Assembly: GCF_036588685.1 (NCBI RefSeq)
Contig: NC_086375.1
Span: 56,978,001 to 57,042,000 of the forward strand
Origin: Mytilus trossulus
Taxonomy: Eukaryota
DNA: 64,000 nt
Reading direction: 5' to 3'
Both the position numbers and the translations under genes were made by a program. Shown here piece by piece: positions 11,501-23,500 of the stretch (positions are counted from its first letter, which is position 1; every line of letters begins with the position of its first letter). The notes beneath the pieces were generated by a model that saw nothing but the letters and a program-made list of their open reading frames with translations, ran no database searches and was not told where the DNA came from.

Positions 11501-14500
11501 GTATGAATGGACTTGCTTCCCTGGAAAGAAAACTGAGATTGTGTTTTACAGTACAAAAGTTATGAGACACAAATCAGACATATGTTTACTACTACAGGGA
11601 TCAATGGTGAGGTCTGACTGACCTGTCCATAGTAAATGTAAATGACTCCCACCTTCACCCCAAGTCCATGATGTCTAAGTTTGGAATAAAATGACAGGTG
11701 GTAGGGTCTAGAAAAGTGATATGCATATGTGTGGCTTATGAGATTGACCTTGTATGTCATTCAATCTTTTTGAAATGAAAAACAGGAATGAATATGGTTT
11801 AGGCATTGGTATCTAAATCTTTTACAAGTTCTCAAAACACACACAAGAGGGTGTGGGGTGACCCTAGGGACTACCCCTTTTTTTCATTTGATTTTTTATA
11901 TTGTCCCATACATGAATATACATAGTTGATGGGTGGGGATCTCGACCGTTATCAAGTTTTCAAACAGGAGGGGTGGGGATCTGGACCGTTATCAAGTTTT
12001 CAAATAGGAGGGGTGGGGACCCCCATGACTTCCCCTATATTTCATTTGATTTGTTATATTGTCCAATACATGAATATATATTGTTGAGGGTGGGGATCTC
12101 ATCTGTTTCTAAGTATCAAACAGAAGTGGGTAGGGTGACCCTAAGGACTCTCCCTATATTTCATTTGATTAGTTCTCACACATGAATATATATGGTTTAA
12201 TTTAAAGGTGGGGATCTCAACTGTTTCCAATTTCTCAATCAGATGACTGCAGGGACTCCCCCAAAATTTCATTTAATTTAGACTGACCTATCAAAATTGA
12301 GAAGAAAAAAAAAACCCTTGAAATTGCAGTAATATGTTTAATTTGAAAAGAATTTAACATGCATTACAAACATTTAACACTGATAAAAAAAATTATACTG
12401 TTACCAGGAACATATATATTGTTAGATAAACTGTTCCCAGCTGTCACTTGTATTGGATTTTGACATTAAAGTTGGTGTACAAAATAATTTCTGCTTTTCT
12501 TTCTTTTAAACAATTTTGGTTTTCAATTCTTATGTTTATATTTATTTACCATGCGTAGCTGTATTTTGTCACCTGTCTGGATTTTTTTAGTTGATAGCCC
12601 CAAAACCCCGATTACCCTTATCCGCTTCCGGAATCGAATCCGATATTGTAATCTCACGGCAGCCATTTTGTATACAATGTTGTTTTTGACAGAAAGTGAG
12701 ATATGATTTTACTTGGATTTACACATTATTTATCAGCGATTTTCTGTATAAAGCTAGCGTATCAAATTGAACATCGCTGTCATGAATAGTAATGATGAAA
12801 ATAAGTTTGAGATCGTTTTTTAGGAAACTTTGGTAAAAATGTTTGCAAAGTTATTTTTTTATTTTCTTTCAACTCAAGGTCCGTCGGTCATCGTAGCTAG
12901 TAATTAAGTAGAAAGTCTGACTGCAAAAGTGGAAGGTCACAGACCCTAGACCACAGCTAATTTGAACCCCTGCGTCCAAATTAAAAAGATTCGAAAATTT
13001 CGTCTTCTAATTCAAAATTGCAGCCAATAGCGTGATCAGTTGAACTTATATATGAAGTTGACTACGTATTGACGACAAACAATATTCCTACGAAATCTTA
13101 ACTCCTTGTCTTTAGAGATTTTCGGCGATTAAATATTTCATACATTTGTTCTTTGACATCTTAGCCAAAAGCTCAACAGTCAGGGTTAGGATGGAAATCC
13201 ATCCAAACTTAAGATTTAGGTATTTGGATGGATATTCCATCCAAAAGAAAAAGGATGGACTTACCATCCATTTGTTTAACAGTTTTAATGGATGGCTTTC
13301 CCTTCCAATTAGAAGATATATGTTTGATGGATAAACCATCCATTTTTTTTCCCTCTGTGCTTGAAAATAGTAGTATACATCTTACACAAATTCAGCAGTT
13401 AGAAATGAATACAGAGAGGATCATCAAGATTGAATGGTCAATAAAAGGATACCATGCTTTTCGGATAAAGCCTCACTCACAAATTGAGTTAGATGTGTTG
13501 CCCGAGGAAGGAAATCCTTTCAGCCAATATGCAACAAAGGTAGTAATGCCACTGCTTCAAGAGATTTCTCCAGATCTTCACAATGTTTCAACCGACATGA
13601 GAGAAGAAAACCACCAAAGGGGACAGCTTATGAAAGATATTGCAGGTTTGTTCATGTTGTTGTTACTCTATTTATATAGTTCATGTACTTTACCATGTTT
13701 ACATTTACCTTGGTTAAAATTTTACTGACACCTACTCATGACAATGTGTCCCCTAAACATGCTAAATGAGGCTAAGTTATACATGTTATATATTCTTTTA
13801 GTCATTTATATATAATAAACACTTTGCAAATTAAAAAGGATTAACCAGTTTTTATCAAAGCTTGGGTAGCTCAATAAAGTCAGTCAGAACATCAGAAATC
13901 TATTATTTTTCTTTTTTTTTGCACAGGAAAACAAGTGGGGAGAGTTCCTGCAAATCTTTGCACAGCTTTCAGAAATATGATTTCTCGGAACACTATCAGA
14001 TGCATTAAGTGTAAAGTCACAGGACCACCAAGACTCTCAGCAAATCCACCATCAAACCAACGATACCGGTCAAACAATAGAGGTCATGACAGACCAGGTG
14101 GGGGAGCAGACATTCCTTGTTCTTATTATTTGCATATACGTGACCGGATGTTTGCAGATACAATGCATATTCTTGAAGACTGTGTACCTCTTAGGGAACT
14201 TGATGAAAGAGTACACGCATGAACATCATGTAAACAAATTTATTGATATCAATTCATACAGCAAGTTCAAAACAACAAGCATTTGTATTCTTAATCATGT
14301 ATGATACACAACATATTATGTAATCATGTTAGATATGTAATATTTTTTTAATATGTATATAAAAATACAACAATATGAAGAAAACATACCCCCACTGTAA
14401 GGATCACCAAACTTTTATAGAATTTGATAATAATCCAAAAATAATCAGAGCATGAAAATTAAACTTGGTAAAAATGGAAGAGACTACTGCAGCATTCATT

Positions 14501-17500
14501 TATAATTCTTTATTTCTCGAATGTCTAGTTGCATTGTTTTTACATAGAATGTCTTCTTAACTTGTAAATAGACATTTGTTGCTCTCCTTAAAATTTATAT
14601 ATATACATATCATTAAATCAAATCAATACAGTTTTACATTCCCAAACACAATCATAATACATGTACTGGTGCGTGGATCCTTAAATTAACATGTTTATTT
14701 TCTTTTCTTAACACTTTAAATACTGTATGAAAAGCAGGGTGAAAACAAAACAAGTACATGATGAATATTAACAGTAGTAAACATTGTGATTAAGTACAAC
14801 ATATGAATATTAGGATAATCCCAAAGTAAGAATTGGGTGGAGCATATAGAAAATAAATTTATCAAAAATATTGTACACACAGTAAAACAAGTAAACAATG
14901 TAAAGTAAAAAACAGTTATCAAAATACATGAAAATCATAGTAATTCAAACAAATGTAAACAAATTTATCAAAATACATGTAGTTTATAACAAATGCAAAA
15001 TCAAAAACATGGTAAATGGAGGAAGATTATAATATAAACAGCAAATTTGGTACTTCAATCATAAATGAATATGACAATCACATTTATTCAGTACATAAAA
15101 TACAAATTAAAATATAAAATTGACATCATTGTACAAATGTCTCTTTTGTGATCATGACGTTATCAGACTACAACAAGTTAATTCAAGACAATGTGATTTT
15201 TTATTTGAGAGGACTTTTACTCATTATGCTTAAAGTAAGATTAAAACATCATAAACAATTTTTGCAAATACTGCCCTCAATATCAACATGATCAATGAAA
15301 TATATACGAGATATGGAATATCACTAGGGTTGATGATGATTGGAACATAAAAGACACAAATTGTAAACATTTAACATTGCAATTTGTAATAATTAACATC
15401 ATGAATGGATGAAAAAAGCCTACACTATCTTGATGTACATAAAAAATGATTATTTGTTTGATTCAGTGCCTTTCTTTCTCCCTCTGCCCTGTCCCCGACC
15501 TCTGCCCCTGCCCCTTGTTTCAACTCTTTCTTTTGGATTAACTCTGTTTTTCCTAACCCATATACGTTTTTTTATATCTGCTATTCTGTCTTTGTCCAAA
15601 GCAATTGCATTTTCACCAGATACAAAAGCTTCTCCCAATTCCTTCCTTTGGGATTCACCTAAGCCTATACCTGGCAAAAATGAGAACTGCTCTGGTGCTT
15701 TCAGGGGAGAAGGTTCTACAGCTTGTTTTTTAACAGTAGATTTGTTCAATTTCAGGAGCAATGATTCTCTTCTTGTCTCTATCATTCCGTCTTTAAAATC
15801 AAGAAGACTCTCATTTTCTTTGAATTTTTTGATGAAATCGTCTGTACCTGTATAGTGGACCTCTCCATTTTCCCTTTTTATTAGGCAGAAGTAAGCTAAT
15901 CTCTCTGCCCCAACTGATGCATTTGTTAACTTGTCAAAAATTTTAAGATTTCGGTCAAAATGCTTCCTTTTTCTATCCTTCTCTCTTCTTTCCATCTGCG
16001 TGGGCGTACCATTTTGTTTGCTCATAAACTTGCCCTTTTGGTTTCTTTTTCTTCCTGTCAAATGACAAGAAGTTAAAAGTGTTATCATTCCATCAAAATG
16101 GTATCATAATTATTTAAAAAGTTTATATAAACAAATGATAAAATGGACAATACATATACATATTAATTTTATACCAGTTTGTTAAGATTGAGTTGTTGTT
16201 TCTACTTATCAAATGTGTTTTTAATAAAGTTATCATCTCTCTAACTTAGTATGTTTTTTTCTAATGAAAAATAAAATAGATTATAGCTACATGTACAACC
16301 AACAGATCTGACAGCTACACAAGGTGTTGGTGTAACCATATAGATCTTGAAATGTAATAATTATTCAAATTGGTACTCAGTTCATTTGCAACACTCATAA
16401 CTAAAAGAAAGTTTAGCGCTTCAATACTGAAAAATTATGTAATCAGTCATGGTTTGCACTATTGTTTAGAACATAAATTGTTGGTTTTCTTGTTTGGAAC
16501 ACATCATTTTGGGGTCTTTCCAGCGTGCTAGGTGGAAGAATCTTTTGCTCCATGTTGAAGGTAGAAGTGACCTATAGCTGTGTACATCATTTGGTCTCTT
16601 GCAGAGAGTTGTCTCATTGGCAATCAGACCACATTCTTTTCATTTTTAAAATATGTACTTACTTGGACTTGGTGTTTTTGAGGTTGATGGCACTTCTTCT
16701 ACTGCATCTAACATAAAGGTTGATGGTGTTGGTATAACTGGACTCAACTCTTCAGGCATTACGTCATCTCCTAAGTCCACCTCATTACTATCAACTATGT
16801 CAATAGAAATCGGCATAATGGTAGATTCTCCTCCTAAAGTATCAACAGCCAAGTCATGAAGAGAAGGTGCATCTAGATCTTCGTCATTTACTGTGTCCAT
16901 AGCTATATTATTTAGGTGGATATCTATAATATTGCCTTCATTTTGTAACCCATCATCTTCTGCAAACACTGTTCATAAAGAAAATAAAAGTACAAAAAGT
17001 CAATAAATGTTTTGTCTCAATTTGTAAACATGACGTTTTCCCTGTTTTAGTATTATGGCTTCTTATATTCATATTGTAGTTGCCATTTATCAGGTTGAGG
17101 AGGGCCCAAGGCACAGAATATGGACATTTATTATAACTGCAATTAATATGATAAACATGATCAATATCTGAGATTTATACTTTACTAGTCATGATAGTGG
17201 CAACATTAATGAAACAGAAAGATGCCATGAATTAAGAACATTTTCATCATAAATTAAATTCAAAAATGTTTAATATTTACTATATATGATAAATTCAAAA
17301 CAGATTGTATTAGACATTGATAAAGAAGTTGAACTTTCGCAATCTTACCTAAATAATTTTCCTGATTTTCTGCTGCAATCACAAGGTTATAAATAGGGTC
17401 ATCAATTCCTTCTGAAAACAGTAAAATTTATTAATCAGCTGATTGAAAAAATGGATCAATTATGCATGCTACAGTCAAATTATTTCTTCTAATTCGAAGA

Positions 17501-20500
17501 TGCAATTATTAGTAATTTTTTAAGCATGCAATCAGGCAACTGTACGTGTACAAAAATCATGCAATTATCAATATTTTGTTCCTTAATAAATAAAGTTGTT
17601 AAATTATCATACAAATGGTAGTGTCATCTAAATTTAAAAAAAAAATAACGTTCATTTCAAAGTTCTCCCTAGATAAAAGAGTCCAGCAAAGTTCTAAAAC
17701 ACATTTAAATTGGTGTCTCGATTTTAACATGGGATAAAATTTAGTGAGCTTTACATACCACACTAGCATTATAAGTTCTCCAACTCTTCATTTAAGAAAT
17801 TACTATCCCCATCTACACTGTCAAGATAAGCAGCAGCAGTTGATATTTCCTCCAAAAACTTTATATGATCCTCCTTCCGAGTGGTTTTACTTCTTATCAT
17901 TTCCCTATATAAATCAAGGAACATGAGCTTATTAATTTCATCAAGATCATCAATTGTATCTAAAATTTTGTTGTCAATCTCTTGAATTGTAAGTGAATCA
18001 ACAGACAAATATTTTTCTCTCTCTGATGGAAGAATGTAGACAGGATGGTGAATGGATGGATCATTTGGTGGTGGCTGATGTAAAAGCATATCCATTATTC
18101 GATAACCTCTCTTTCTATTTGATTCTCTTGTAAAATACAACAGTTCTTGATCTAGAATATCAGCTGAAATTGATGTTAATACTGGTCCATGTTTTTGGTC
18201 ACTTATATAACCAGTTTGTCGAAGGCGTAGTCTCCACTCATTTATAGGAGCTTCTAAATCTGGTTCTTTTCCATGCAAGTCCTCATATACGCTTCCTACA
18301 ATACTGGTTACAGATTTTTTAATCTGTTTCAGTGATTGATTATTTCTACAAGTTGACAACCATACTTTTTCAGTTGGAACACCTCGTTTCAACCATGTCT
18401 TTACAGATTTATTTTCTTCTTCAAGAATGAAGTCAAACCCTTGACCTTTGCTCTTATTCCCTGATTTGGATAGACTACAGTGAGAGGCAAAATGTGTTTT
18501 TAGTTCAACTGGCATTAGCTGATGTACAAAATGATCAAATACTTCAATGTCTTGGTATTTGGGATGGTTCCTTCCATGAAAGAGCTCCTTACTCATAAAT
18601 TTTCCTGCTTGCAGAAGAATGTAATTGTTGCGTCTCACAGCCATTCTTATATTTATGATAGCTTGAGTATACCTACATACCATTTCAAATAGATACAGAT
18701 AATTCGCATTGTCACTTTTTGTCTTTACATATGAAATGTAGTCTTGAGGACTAGGATCATGCTTTTCATGTAGACATTTTTCAACATATGGCTTGACCAA
18801 CTCTAAAATTGTACCTAAATGAAATATCATGATGAGTTGCCATGTCTTGTGGTTGTCAGAACATGCCAATGCTGATTTCTGGGCCTTTTCAGATCTAAAT
18901 CCCATTACCTCAACTAATGATTTCATGCATACATTCCAGTTCAATTCCATAAAGCTCTTCATAAGGTTCATTTCATAATGACCATCACCACAAATAAGGA
19001 ATACCCAATCAAATTCTTGAACATATCGTGATCTTGTATTAGGATGTGCTTTGACTTCATGATCTTCAACATTCTTAATACCTAAAAATCCTTCTTCACA
19101 TTCTAAGCATACAAAGTACTCTTCAACAACTCTTCGTACCAATCCATGCGGAAGCCCATCACAGCAAACGAATGTCCAAAATCTTTTTGGGGTTTCATCA
19201 TCGTCTTTCAAATATTTAGAAATTCTTCCTTTTTTACCAATATGTCGTAGAACTAATACGATGCTGTCAATAGAATTGGGATTTACAAATACAGGATCCA
19301 ACAGACAAATTTCAGCTGGAATGTCATTATGTGAAGATTCAACATGGCTATATTTCTGTGGATTTTCAACAACTGGTTTGGAAATACCATACTCATTGAC
19401 AGTGCTTTTTCTTGAAAAGTGTTTCTGTTTGACACCATCAGTACTTTTAGTAGTCTTTGCTTCTATCAGCGCCTCATGACACTGTGAGCATTTTCTCTTG
19501 TTTTTCTCAAATAAGCAGCCACACCTTGGACATTTTTTATATTTCTGTTCTATCTCTAATTCAACAATAGTTTTGTCCACATGATCCTTCCATAGATTAT
19601 TTTCCTCGTCAAATATAACTTCCTCTGACACTTGTTGGATAGCTAAGTCCAATACATGATACAGTTCATTGTAGTGATTTTGCTTAATATCCGAATAAAA
19701 ATCTGTACTTGTATCTTGACTATCACCTGACTGACACATACTTTCTATAATGTTCTCTTTTCCTTCAGAAGTTATCCACTTTCCTGGTGTTAAACTTTCA
19801 TTCTGTTGAAGGTTTTTGTTTTCTGTTACCTTTATTGCAGCAACATTTGTAATTACAGACATTTTGACCTTATTATTAGCATTTATGTTCCAACTTCTCC
19901 CTATGACCTGTTCATTATCAAAAACGAATATTACATCCCCACTTGGACAATTGGTCTCTCTTCCAATATTTATATCTGAAACAAAATTATATACTGTGGC
20001 ATATTTTGCCCCTGGAATAGCAGTTCCCAAAACATTACAAGCCGTTTTGTTTTTGGTAAAGGAATAAACAACTAAGTTCTGCATAAAAGACCAGGCTCCA
20101 ATGAACTGAGGGTCGCATAAACGATAAATACTTTCAAGTACCGGAATGAAATTTTCTACTTTAATTGTTGTTGTTGTTTTTCCAGTGAGTGCCAAAACAC
20201 ATTGTATAACAAGCTGATCAAACTGATTAATGTACTCATTGATATCGATGCTCTCAAGTGTTTTCAGATTGTTGTAGGGAAAAGACTTTTGATGATTTTG
20301 TATAATATTTTTCATTTCCTGATTAGTATGAACATGTCCAATCATTTTAGCTATACATTCAAGTTTTTCAGATATTTCTAACGAGGAAAATAACTGTAAT
20401 AATTCATCCATAACATTGTCAGTAGAACATCCTGGATTGTTCGAACTGCAAATTTGACAATCAATGGAATGAGCATGGTACTGGTATAGTTTTATATTAA

Positions 20501-23500
20501 CTGTGGTATTGGAGCTTTTTTTCCGAGTAGATCTATATCTAAACAGAATGCTTCTACATGCATTACACAAAAAATCTGGATGAATCAAAGGGTCATCTTC
20601 ATGCAAACAGATATCAAATATATCCATTAGTTCCTGCGTAAATTTAAATTTTCCTACTCTTTTTTTACACTCAGTCTGCCTGCAACAGAGACGGCACAAA
20701 TTTTGAAGCCTTTTTACATGCTCTGAAATAAAAAAAGAATATTATAGGACAGTTGATATCAAGTGAACGCAAAAATTTTGAAGTCATTAATTTGTTTCTG
20801 AATTTATCACAGCTTAAAATTTACACTAAATATAAAAAATAGAAAATGTGGTATGATATCCAAGGATCCAAGATTGTTAATGTCAGCAATTATATATATA
20901 TCCGTATTGCCTTCAATGAAGAGCAAAAGCCCACACCTCATAGCAAGTTAAATTTTAAAAAATACTGGCCATGGCCATCTTATTTCTTCAAAAGAAATAA
21001 CCAATATCATAGATTTAAAACAAACCTTCTGTCTGTAAACTTATAAATTAATAAGAAACTAAGGTCTGGTTTTGTTAAGGGACTAAGGAAAAAAGTATAA
21101 TTGTCTTGGGGCCGGATTCAGAATAAAAGCAAAACTATCATTTGACTATGTAAAATGTAGGATTTTAAAAAAAAAAAAAATTTCGGGACAGACTATATGT
21201 GAACCAAATCTAGTTTAGTTAAAATTCACTACTTAAAATGCCAATAAAACTTAAGGGTCGACGTTTTGAGCATGTTGTTCCATTAAAAAAAATATGGTAC
21301 GCTTACGGAACACCAGTATACTTATTTTATTTCATCCTCCTTCATCAAAGTTCATTATAAACCATTGAATTTATGTATACTGGAGATAAATGGGCAATCA
21401 TTCATGTCAGACTGTTAAATCATGACAATTATGTTCTACATCTAAAATCCATGCGGGGTATTTAAGACATCATGCAAAACATGCAACTTGTACTTTCATT
21501 TGGTTTGGGGTGGGCTACATGCACTGTTTAAAATTCTGTACACAAAAGTAAATCTTAACAATTCTGACAATATCATACACTGAAAATGATAATTCATACT
21601 CACTTTTTAAGTAAAATTGTAAGACATAAATTGTGACAATTATTTGGGTTTCAGTGTGTCATACAATTTTTCTTCAAAATATTGAGGACAGATTATTTAT
21701 TAAAAATATATAGCTTTCAGACATTAAAGCCAAATTTGTATCTGTAACTTTGTGTATCATGTTTATTATCACATGCCTATTCAGAAAATGATCTGATAAG
21801 GACAAAAAACAAAAGTTGTGTTTACCATATGTAATGTAATCTGTTGAAAAAAAGGGATGTCACAGTAAGTCAATTTTTATTTTATTGAACATGTTGAATT
21901 GCTATTTAGTTTATTTATTGCATGTTTTAGTGTGTTATTGCAATATCAGATCCAGAACAGGTGAAACTGTTATATATATATAGAAGGGATAGGCAAAGAA
22001 CCCTTTAAATAAGTGAAATTCCGTTGAAATAAAATTTAAACGTCACGCAAAAAAGGGGGGTCCACCCAATCATGTCAATATAACAGCACATGTGGGTGAA
22101 AGACAACCAACAGAATCGTAAAGCAGACGGATGGAATTTCCATCCACTTTATGTATAAAATAATGGATGGATTTCCCATCCACTATTATTAACAAAGTGG
22201 ATGGATTTTCCATCAAATTTTGTCTATACGCTTTTTTAAAATAGGATGGATTTTCCATCCAAATTTCAACGATCGTTTTCATGTGGCAGAAATGCATCAG
22301 ACGTTCGGTCAACGTTCGGACATTTCCCGTTGATATTTTGGGTCATTAGGCTATTTTATCATTAAATGTATATCTTATGAATGAAAATATGCCTGTTTTT
22401 ATCATGAGGAAATATTTTGAGCTCCACAAATAGCTATATTCTTACCAGGTATGCTCGGATCGTTTTCAGGTTCAGTCGCCATTTTTCCGTGTTATTGTTG
22501 ATACGAAAATCACGTGATCGATGACAAAACCTCGTGATAACCTATGCTATTTTTACCACGGGATTTTCCTCTAAATTAACACCGATATGCAACGTACACG
22601 CTTAAAATATTCGATTTTCTTTAATACGCAGTATTGGATGGATTTAACATCCAAATATGAGGGATGGATTTCCATCCTAACCCTGACTGCTCAATGGATA
22701 ATAAACTACACAAGGATTCATAATGAGCTCTACTTCCTATGGGCAACTTCAAAACTTTTGGGAAAATCAACAATCATTTAAGGTTTTTCTTGTCATATTT
22801 TTTGTAATCCAGAATGAAAAGTATGAAAAAAACTGTCCAATAAGTTATAAATAATAAAGTAGCCAGCAAGATGATAACAATGGCACGTATTTCAGCATTT
22901 ATTGGGTAGCACACAAATCGAGGGTGCTCGCATAAGGCAGCTTAACTGCCTAAAAATGAGAGATATTTTGAATGCATTTTCCTGAAATTTGACCTGTCTT
23001 TAAAGTAAGTTATTTGAATTTTGACAAATGAATGTAGTTAAATGTCAATTATTTAAAACTTGTACTAAGATAAATAATTAATCAACAATCAAAACTAATT
23101 TTAATACCTATGTGATGTGATATCTGATGAAATTTTAAAACCTTGAGATCTATATAAAAATCTGATGACCTGATGGAAAAGATTTGATTAAGTAAGGTAT
23201 TGGTTTTGAATTCCTATTAATAGCCTATACACCTATTAGAAGAGTTCCAACAACATTATATCACATGCAATGAATTAGATAATAGTGTCCAACCTGATGA
23301 CATATTATTTCAACTTTGAAATTTATCAACAACTAAAATAATGCTATACTTCTGTGATTCTCTATCATAATTAACTCAATATAAATCAAGCTTTCTCCTT
23401 CTAAATTAGTGGCACAAAAAAATATACAGGACATTACCTCTAAAAAGTGTGTCAAAGCTTCCCCAGCTGTTGAGGTAGGTGGTGTAGCAAATAATGTAGC

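What the first reader, a model, noticed from the sequence alone, without database searches (positions are those of the whole stretch)
13172..22694. Intact three-gene DNA transposon that fits no superfamily description I know
Seen: perfect 28-bp TIRs starting CAG, a 5-bp TSD (CTCAA), three uninterrupted gene models, and palindromic subterminal arrays. Known: Academ elements carry an XPG nuclease (AcademX, 3-4-bp TSD) or a RecQ-like helicase (AcademH, ~9-bp TSD). Chapaev elements have CAC ends and 3-4-bp TSD. Transib/RAG-like elements have CAC ends and 5-bp TSD. This element combines an Academ-like core with no XPG or helicase, a RAG1-like N-terminus, a 5-bp TSD, CAG ends and a convergent HIRAN-like gene. 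Inference: a possibly undescribed lineage, and a recent or still active insertion.
Basis: partly seen in the sequence, partly recalled or inferred. Interest (0 to 1): 0.93.

Follow-up and report, generated by a model that had tools for sequence, protein, structure and literature searches.

The report
Young RAG1-finger DNA transposon in mussel
This is a real, very recently mobile 9.5-kb cut-and-paste DNA transposon of a mussel genome, and it matters because its transposase joins a RAG1-type N-terminal zinc finger to a catalytic core of the DUF6589 (probably Academ) kind rather than a RAG1/Transib kind.

Summary
The window carries perfect 28-bp inverted ends (CAG...CTG) flanked by a 5-bp duplication. 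The genome holds three full copies, about 99.9% alike, each with its own 5-bp duplication. At least 126 uninterrupted copies of the host repeat it landed in carry the target once. Two of the three copies keep an intact 996-aa transposase that matches a RefSeq Mytilus trossulus protein. Spliced RNA-like contigs confirm its exon junctions.

The transposase has three parts: a RAG1 NZD/Chapa zinc finger (profile E 7e-8 to the solved RAG1 domain), a zinc ribbon, and a DDE core. The only Pfam relative of the core is DUF6589. In this genome at least 40 ordinary DUF6589 genes sit next to a helicase gene, as described for AcademH. The Chapa-bearing branch, this element included, has no helicase or XPG.

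It fails the end and duplication criteria of Academ, Chapaev and CACTA, and the end and core criteria of Transib. A second protein, sharing exon 1 and skipping the transposase exon, is frame-consistent and partly RNA-supported. The "HIRAN-like" label is unsupported.

No Repbase or Dfam search was possible, so "undescribed" remains open. The scan's first readers flagged similar chimeric transposases elsewhere in this genome.

The parts
13172..13176 (.). Left target-site duplication CTCAA
   Evidence: Paralogous empty sites carry the target once.
13177..13204 (+). Left 28-bp terminal inverted repeat (CAGTCAGGGTTAGGATGGAAATCCATCC), which contains one palindromic site
   Evidence: The pattern with up to 3 mismatches finds only the 6 ends of the 3 copies plus one solo end.
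13190..13340 (.). Left subterminal array: 4 perfect GATGG-N4/5-CCATC palindromes (13190, 13227, 13254, 13326) plus one degenerate copy near 13287
   Evidence: 9 matches in the window, 0.05 expected by chance; sequence.
13405..13645 (+). Small convergent gene, exon 1. The RefSeq model starts further upstream, at 13255.
   Evidence: Donor GCAG|gtttgt. P0185 (RefSeq XP_063429019.1, 228 aa) reads ...[12 protein letters not shown]... across the junction. A decayed older copy of this end plus exon 1 lies at L005.
13927..14222 (+). Small convergent gene, exon 2 with its stop
   Evidence: Acceptor tgcacag|GAAAAC and P0185. Paralogues lie at C11:9158847 (58%) and C11:46976555 (42%).
15450..16054 (-). 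Accessory gene, last exon (basic, RG-rich tail) with its stop
   Evidence: Acceptor tttgacag|GAAGAAA in phase 1. A 36%-identical homologue lies 3 kb downstream, on the same strand, of the 47%-identical transposase paralogue on C12.
16663..16968 (-). Accessory gene, acidic exon (exon 4 of the transcription unit)
   Evidence: The 5' junction 17349>16968 is seen in RNA-like contigs of two runs. The 3' donor A|GTAAGT at 16663/16662 is predicted only.
17349..17411 (-). 63-nt exon 3
   Evidence: Joints 17759>17411 and 17349>16968 with GT..AG on the minus strand. The exon is open in phase 1.
17759..20722 (-). Transposase exon 2: CDS 20722..17772, stop TAA at 17771-17769, exon end 10 nt later
   Evidence: 976-aa ORF; identical to residues 21-996 of RefSeq P0189; joints.
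22130..22259 (.). Right internal array: 4 perfect palindromes (22130, 22166, 22200, 22245) inside intron 1
22446..22482 (-). Shared exon 1 coding part ([12 protein letters not shown] + 1 nt), donor CCTG|gtaaga
   Evidence: An X1 contig ends at 20723 with 8 further letters that equal the end of exon 1. P0189 residues 1-20. The junction restores the EHVxxLxxLCRLC motif of the homologues.
22662..22689 (-). Right 28-bp terminal inverted repeat, with a degenerate palindrome just inside it at 22634-22657
22690..22694 (.). Right target-site duplication CTCAA

Best explanation
This is an autonomous, very recently (probably still) active cut-and-paste DDE transposon of Mytilus trossulus.

Shown:
- It is bounded by 28-bp CAG...CTG inverted repeats and makes 5-bp duplications.
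- The five known left flanks end in AA, which suggests a TTNAA-like target.
- One minus-strand transcription unit starts in the right subterminal region.
- Exon 1 spliced to the 3-kb exon 2 gives a 996-aa transposase.
- That transposase consists of a type-I Chapa/NZD zinc finger as in RAG1/RAG1L, a CxxC...CxxC zinc ribbon, and an RNase-H-like DDE core. [quoted passage not shown] Add 20 for RefSeq numbering.
- The core belongs to the DUF6589 superfamily.

Inferred:
- DUF6589 is the Academ transposase, because ordinary DUF6589 genes here are paired with helicase genes.
- This Chapa-bearing branch lost or never had the helicase or XPG partner.
- Skipping of exon 2 (exon 1>3>4>5, all in phase 1) yields an acidic/basic accessory protein of about 337 aa.
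- That protein, or the Chapa finger, binds the palindromic GGATGG-N-CCATCC sites at both ends as a dimer. This would pair the ends for cleavage and could feed back on the promoter, since the sites bracket exon 1.
- The layout resembles TnpA/TnpD of En/Spm.
- The small convergent gene is a long-standing passenger or cofactor of unknown fold.
For: Mobility.

Gene models.

Chapa/NZD domain:
- The A1 profile matches the solved RAG1 NZD 21wb_A at E 7e-8 and full-length RAG1 residues 142-276.
- PF12560 is found in 18 of 50 relatives.
- Residues 1-64 resemble the ZAD domain, VIA Z 6.6, as the 2026 preprint describes for NZD.
- The ligand pattern is one N-terminal His plus H, C, C, i.e. type I.

Core:
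- D, D, E, C2 and H2 are invariant or nearly so.
- The AF2 model has pLDDT 87.
- VIA gives DDE transposases: P element Z 10.0 (353 aligned), ISCth4 8.2, Hermes 8.1, RAG1 6.0, HzTransib 5.1.
- DUF6589 is hit by 27 of 50 relatives, two above Pfam's cut-off.
- hhalign against the P0091-type DUF6589 proteins gives probability 100%, E 1e-108.

Link to Academ:
- At least 40 DUF6589 loci have a Helicase_C hit 2-9 kb away on the other strand, where chance would give about 0.2.
- None of the 56 Chapa-branch loci has one within 20 kb.

Accessory gene: it is conserved next to the 47%-identical paralogue.
Against: - The identification of DUF6589 with Academ rests on the helicase pairing plus the published description of AcademH. 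No Academ reference sequence was available, and KolobokH also pairs a transposase with a helicase.
- Direct hhalign of the helicase-paired DUF6589 proteins against this family is weak (probability 1.5%, E 0.035, C-terminal part only). Homology to them is therefore transitive, through Pfam and the P0091-type proteins.
- The exon 1>exon 3 junction and the exon 4>exon 5 junction were not seen in RNA.
- Two raw RNA-seq runs gave almost no reads.
- Binding of either protein to the palindromes is inference.
Confidence: 0.62

Rival explanations
1. It is an ordinary member of the already described Chapaev group (CMC clade), of the kind known from Aplysia as N-RAG-TP / Chapaev-n_ACa. On this reading it only has unusual ends and a 5-bp duplication, and DUF6589 is simply the Pfam face of Chapaev-type cores.
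For: - The literature says the Chapa domain occurs only in Chapaev, Chapaev3 and TransibSU/RAG1L.
- 5'-CA..TG-3' ends and 2-5-bp TSDs fit the wider CMCT clade.
- A basic GRP/GRG stretch follows the Chapa finger both in relatives and in Chapaev-1/2_NV.
- Two proteins from one transcription unit plus subterminal repeats recall En/Spm.
Against: - The ends are CAG/CTG, not CAC/GTG, and the TSD is 5 bp, not 3-4.
- No relative hits DUF1280, the Pfam family assigned to Chapaev, and that family is absent from this genome.
- There is no LH motif.
- The C2H2 pair is only 12 residues apart, not split by a large insertion domain as in RAG1.
- Structure ranks P element, IS256 and hAT above RAG1 and Transib.
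- Relatives of the core pair with helicases, which is not described for Chapaev.
Confidence: 0.28
2. It is a Transib/RAG-like transposon, i.e. a direct relative of the RAG1 ancestor.
For: 5-bp TSD; CA-start ends; a RAG1L-like N-terminal finger.
Against: - The family profile matches only residues 142-276 of full-length RAG1, and nothing in the core at E<=10.
- VIA Z is 6.0 for RAG1 and 5.1 for HzTransib, below P element at 10.0.
- There is no heptamer-like CACAGTG end.
- No RAG2-like gene is present among the ORFs.
Confidence: 0.04
3. The two non-transposase genes are passengers (captured host fragments) with no role in transposition, so the element is functionally a one-gene transposon.
For: - Neither has a recognisable domain.
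- The small gene has paralogues away from any transposase.
- No accessory homologue was found within 1.5 kb of the more distant transposase paralogues.
Against: - The accessory exons keep the phase of exon 1 through three junctions and stay open.
- A homologue lies in the same position and strand in the 47%-identical sister family.
- A decayed older element end still carries exon 1 of the small gene.
Confidence: 0.3

Closest known systems
Academ superfamily (AcademH / AcademX)
   Same: The core's only Pfam relative is DUF6589. Ordinary DUF6589 genes in this genome sit beside an oppositely oriented SF2 helicase gene, the organisation published for AcademH. The taxon range also agrees (molluscs, cnidarians, fungi).
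   Different: There is no helicase and no XPG nuclease. The TSD is 5 bp, against 9-10 (AcademH) or 3-4 (AcademX). The N-terminal finger is Chapa/NZD, whereas ordinary DUF6589 proteins carry a CxCxxH...CxxC finger. A C2H2 mini-finger is present that the helicase-paired proteins lack.
Chapaev / Chapaev3 (CMC clade), including Aplysia N-RAG-TP
   Same: An N-terminal Chapa domain. [quoted passage not shown] The ends start with CA. The host is a mollusc.
   Different: CAG/CTG ends instead of CAC/GTG. A 5-bp TSD instead of 3-4 bp or TWA. No match to DUF1280. No RING after the Chapa finger.
Transib / RAG-like transposons
   Same: A 5-bp TSD. An NZD finger close to the echinoderm RAG1L type (F..HS..C.IC).
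   Different: The catalytic core is not detectably RAG1-like. There is no RAG2-like partner and no heptamer-like ends.
En/Spm (CACTA) TnpA/TnpD system
   Same: One transcription unit with a shared first exon, the transposase ORF lying inside what is an intron for the second protein, and arrays of short binding-site-like repeats at both ends.
   Different: No sequence similarity. The exon-skipped isoform has not yet been seen. The repeats here are palindromes. The TSD and ends differ.
Drosophila P element transposase (structure 6pe2/6p5a)
   Same: It is the best structural neighbour of residues 170-797 (Z 10.0, 353 aligned, rmsd 6.4).
   Different: 11% identity; no THAP domain; no GTP-binding insertion recognised; a 5-bp TSD against 8 bp.

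Membership tests
AcademX | Transposase fused or linked to an XPG nuclease | tested here: not met
   No XPG domain in the element's ORFs. Genome-wide, XPG_I gives only 3 host-like hits, none near this element or any DUF6589 locus.
AcademX | 3-4-bp TSD | tested here: not met
   5 bp in all three copies, confirmed by paralogous empty sites.
AcademH | Helicase gene inside the element | tested here: not met
   No Helicase_C hit in C3:56991177-57000689 or within 20 kb of any of the 56 related transposase loci.
AcademH | 9-10-bp TSD | tested here: not met
   5 bp.
Academ (any) | Transposase core homologous to Academ transposases | tested here: inconclusive
   The core is DUF6589-related and DUF6589 genes pair with helicases. 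No Academ reference sequence was available, and direct hhalign to the helicase-paired proteins is weak.
Chapaev (CMC) | N-terminal Chapa zinc finger | tested here: met
   The pattern matches the alignment in Additional file 5 of PMC4411706.
Chapaev (CMC) | 5'-CAC...GTG-3' termini | tested here: not met
   The ends are CAG...CTG.
Chapaev (CMC) | 3-4-bp TSD (TWA for Chapaev3) | tested here: not met
   5 bp: CTCAA, ACAAA, TTCAA.
Chapaev (CMC) | C(2)C, LH and H(4)H motifs in the DDE domain | tested here: inconclusive
   C531xxC534 and H547x4H552 are present between D514 and E576. No conserved LH was found, and the spacing is far shorter than in RAG1.
Chapaev (CMC) | Core matching Pfam DUF1280 (assigned to Chapaev by Majorek et al.) | tested here: not met
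   No hit among the 25 families listed (of 53) for the 50 relatives at E<=0.1. The family was not found in this genome.
Transib / RAGL | 5-bp TSD | tested here: met
Transib / RAGL | RAG1-like catalytic core | tested here: not met
   The profile matches only the NZD part of RAG1. VIA Z is 5-6, below other DDE folds.
CACTA / En-Spm | CACTA termini, 3-bp TSD, Transposase_21 core | tested here: not met
HIRAN domain (small convergent gene) | Match to Pfam HIRAN or to a HIRAN fold | tested here: not met
   No Pfam family at E<=1 for P0185 or three homologues. No PDB sequence match. The AF2 model has pLDDT 34, so the fold could not be judged.

The most novel reading that the evidence does not exclude
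A so far undescribed branch of the DUF6589/Academ transposase superfamily has acquired the RAG1L-type NZD/Chapa zinc finger, dropped the helicase/XPG partner, and makes RAG/Transib-like 5-bp duplications. If so, the NZD is a module that moved between unrelated transposase superfamilies. This live mussel element, with palindromic end sites, would then give an independent system for finding out what the RAG1 N-terminal finger binds.
Probability: 0.3. Interest if true: 0.78.

Novelty: new variant of a known kind. Interest (0 to 1): 0.62.

Why it matters
[quoted passage not shown] Current literature holds that, outside RAG1/RAG1L, only Chapaev transposases keep such a finger. Here the finger sits on a core whose detectable relatives are DUF6589 proteins paired with helicases. 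The element is young enough (two intact transposase copies, about 0.1% divergence, spliced transcripts) to be tested directly for activity and DNA binding. It would also be a candidate new active transposon system from a bivalve. If Repbase already files the family under Chapaev or Academ, the value shrinks to a well-annotated active copy with an unusual 5-bp TSD.

Tried and rejected
- Foldseek of the whole model against the PDB gave nothing at E<=0.001.
- The Pfam DUF1280 search of the genome was blank.
- XPG_I gave only host genes.
- The Atlas searches only repeated the DUF6589/Mollusca result.
- A homology search from a DUF6589 protein (P0091) found no XPG or helicase fusions.
- I tried to find the ends of paralogous families, but the 1.5-kb flanks of 27 transposase loci and 8 DUF6589 loci do not reach any terminus, and the L016/L017 break is not a clean end. 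The TSD length of sister families and of helicase-paired DUF6589 elements is therefore unknown.
Elements of other species could not be read.
- The Academ papers (Kojima 2020; Yuan & Wessler 2011) are not held.
- Structure prediction of the small protein failed.
- Segmental duplication is rejected, because the three copies have unrelated flanks and their own TSDs.
- Spliced models were never joined by me for a search. Exons were searched by reference, and the full proteins used (P0185, P0189) are RefSeq products returned by the tools. The joined accessory protein was not searched or folded.
Full report
**Observation**

The window has perfect 28-nt inverted repeats at 13177-13204 and 22662-22689. 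They are flanked by CTCAA on both sides. The genome (1.3 Gb, 541 contigs) holds exactly three full copies plus one 97-bp solo left end. The two other copies, on contig C5, share the same ends to the base but have unrelated flanks and their own 5-bp duplications, ACAAA and TTCAA.

The three copies differ at 19 alignment columns in 9.5 kb. One C5 copy has a TAA stop in the transposase. The other two are intact.

A pattern made of the two flanks with one copy of the target matches at least 126 sites of an interspersed host repeat (consensus ...AAAAG CTCAG GGGATAAT...). The reversed control gives 0. So the element landed in a repeat copy and duplicated 5 bp. The left flanks of all five known ends, including the solo end L004 and an old decayed end L005, finish with AA: CTCAA, ACAAA, TTCAA, TTAAA, TTTAA. 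This suggests a TTNAA-like target, though n=5.

**Genes**

*Transposase.* The 976-aa ORF (17769-20699, minus strand) lacks the start of the zinc finger that its homologues have. An upstream exon (ATG at 22482, donor CCTG|gtaaga at 22446/22445) joined to the acceptor at 20723/20722 restores [13 protein letters not shown]. This matches the homologue consensus. The RefSeq Mytilus trossulus protein XP_063425767.1 (P0189, 996 aa) is exactly this product.

*RNA evidence.* RNA-like Logan contigs from two species labels show GT..AG introns on the minus strand at 17758-17412 and 17348-16969. One contig end carries the last 8 letters of exon 1 joined to exon 2. The transposase stop (17771-17769) lies 10 nt before the exon-2 donor. 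The observed transcript therefore carries exons 3 and 4 as 3' UTR. Two raw RNA-seq runs, sampled at 6% and 18%, gave almost no reads.

*Accessory gene.* Exon 3 (17411-17349), exon 4 (16968-16663, donor predicted) and exon 5 (16054-15450) are all open in phase 1, which is the phase left by exon 1. Skipping of exon 2 would therefore give a protein of about 337 aa with an acidic half, a basic half and an RG-rich tail. That isoform was not observed. Its last exon has a 36%-identical homologue 3 kb downstream, on the same strand, of the 47%-identical transposase paralogue on C12.

*Small plus-strand gene.* This gene (13405-13645 and 13927-14222) equals RefSeq XP_063429019.1 (P0185). An old degenerate element end (L005, 66% identity) still carries its first exon. 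It has no Pfam, PDB or usable structural match. "HIRAN-like" therefore remains a motif-level impression.

**Ends**

Nine perfect GATGG-N4/5-CCATC palindromes occur in the 64-kb window, where 0.05 are expected. All lie in the element: four at 13190-13340, four at 22130-22259 inside intron 1, and one in each TIR, the left TIR's site being the first of the left four. Two degenerate copies bring the total to eleven. On the right side they bracket exon 1.

**Transposase anatomy**

- *N-terminal finger.* The family profile hits the solved mouse RAG1 NZD (21wb_A) at E 7e-8, and full-length RAG1 only at residues 142-276. PF12560 is found in 18 of 50 relatives. The ligand pattern (one N-terminal His, then CxxC, HP..C..C, H...C..C) is the type-I Chapa/RAG1L pattern of the 2026 preprint. 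It lines up with echinoderm RAG1L in Additional file 5 of Kapitonov & Koonin 2015. No RING follows it.
- *Conserved residues.* D261, D514, E576, C531, C534, H547, and a zinc ribbon C390/C393/C404/C407 are invariant or nearly so in 15 to 50 relatives.
- *Structure.* The AlphaFold model (pLDDT 87) is an RNase-H-like DDE transposase. VIA-align gives P element Z 10.0 (353 aligned), ISCth4 8.2, Hermes 8.1, RAG1 6.0 and HzTransib 5.1. Foldseek alone found nothing significant.

**Family**

A profile search finds 4439 representative clusters at E<=1e-3. The nearest Atlas clusters are molluscan. The genome has 56 matches, including many intact paralogues of 885-1142 aa at 33-47% identity.

The only Pfam family for the core is DUF6589. 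The query itself scores weakly (E 0.004). 27 of 50 relatives hit it, two above the gathering score. hhalign against P0091-type DUF6589 proteins gives probability 100% over 784 columns. Those proteins carry a different N-terminal finger, CxCxxH...CxxC.

The genome has over 100 DUF6589 matches. At least 40 of them have a Helicase_C hit 2-9 kb away on the opposite strand, for example C12:49673922(-)/49678115(+), C3:33062379(+)/33059390(-) and C13:176388(-)/181679(+). Chance would give about 0.2 such pairs. None of the Chapa-branch loci has a helicase hit within 20 kb. XPG_I hits are host genes only.

A transposase plus a helicase is the published organisation of AcademH. KolobokH is the alternative, but no THAP domain is present. 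Direct hhalign of the helicase-paired proteins to this family is weak. The link is therefore transitive.

**Comparison with known superfamilies**

- Chapaev: CAC/GTG ends and 3-4-bp TSDs. Chapaev3: TWA.
- Academ: 3-4 or 9-10-bp TSDs.
- Transib: 5 bp.

The element meets the loose CMCT description and carries the Chapa domain. It fails the specific Chapaev, Transib, CACTA and Academ criteria (see the membership table). Pfam's Chapaev family DUF1280 is not matched and is not found in this genome.

**Verdict**

This is a real, young, probably active three-gene transposon. The most likely reading is a Chapa-domain branch of the DUF6589 (probably Academ) superfamily without helicase or XPG. The main rival is that it is simply what Repbase calls Chapaev or N-RAG-TP. 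Repbase and Dfam were not available, so whether it is undescribed cannot be settled here.

**Limits**

The Academ source papers are not held. I searched or folded no joined spliced model of my own.

Noticed in passing
window 13120-13176 and 22690-22760: The element sits inside a copy of an interspersed repeat with at least 126 near-identical sites genome-wide (CATCTTAGCCAAAAGCTCAGGGGATAATAAACTACA[C/T]). The repeat family itself was not characterised.
   Followed up: partly
window 16760-20723 (runs X1, X3 and others): Runs labelled as four other organisms (B-E) hold parts of the element. Organism B's spliced contigs differ at only 3 positions over about 2.5 kb. This points to very recent sharing between species labels, through introgression in the Mytilus complex, horizontal transfer, or mislabelling.
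   Followed up: no
G000 C12:49672422-49680000, C3:33059000-33065474, C13:174888-182100 and about 40 more loci: DUF6589 transposase genes (984-999 aa, intact, in multiple near-identical copies) are paired head-to-head with a Helicase_C gene. These are likely active AcademH-type elements. Their proteins carry a PHD-like cysteine cluster and lack the C2H2 mini-finger.
   Followed up: partly
G000 C14:48545013, C13:51389895, C7:38715296: DUF6589 matches inside very long open frames (1816, 1835 and 2171 aa), possibly fusion proteins. Their sequences were not fetched.
   Followed up: no
G000 C5:39121411-39124464 (minus strand): A 39%-identical paralogue of exon 2 of the small gene lies 2.5 kb from a Helicase_C hit on the same strand. 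This hints that the small gene could derive from a helicase-gene module.
   Followed up: no
window 17769-17759: The transposase stop codon lies 10 nt before a used splice donor, with at least two exon junctions downstream. That layout would normally expose the mRNA to nonsense-mediated decay and may be regulatory.
   Followed up: no
G000 contig C5: Contig C5 holds two of the three copies, the solo end, and a large share of the degenerate transposase and accessory-gene fragments. It may be a repeat-rich chromosome or a preferred landing area.
   Followed up: no
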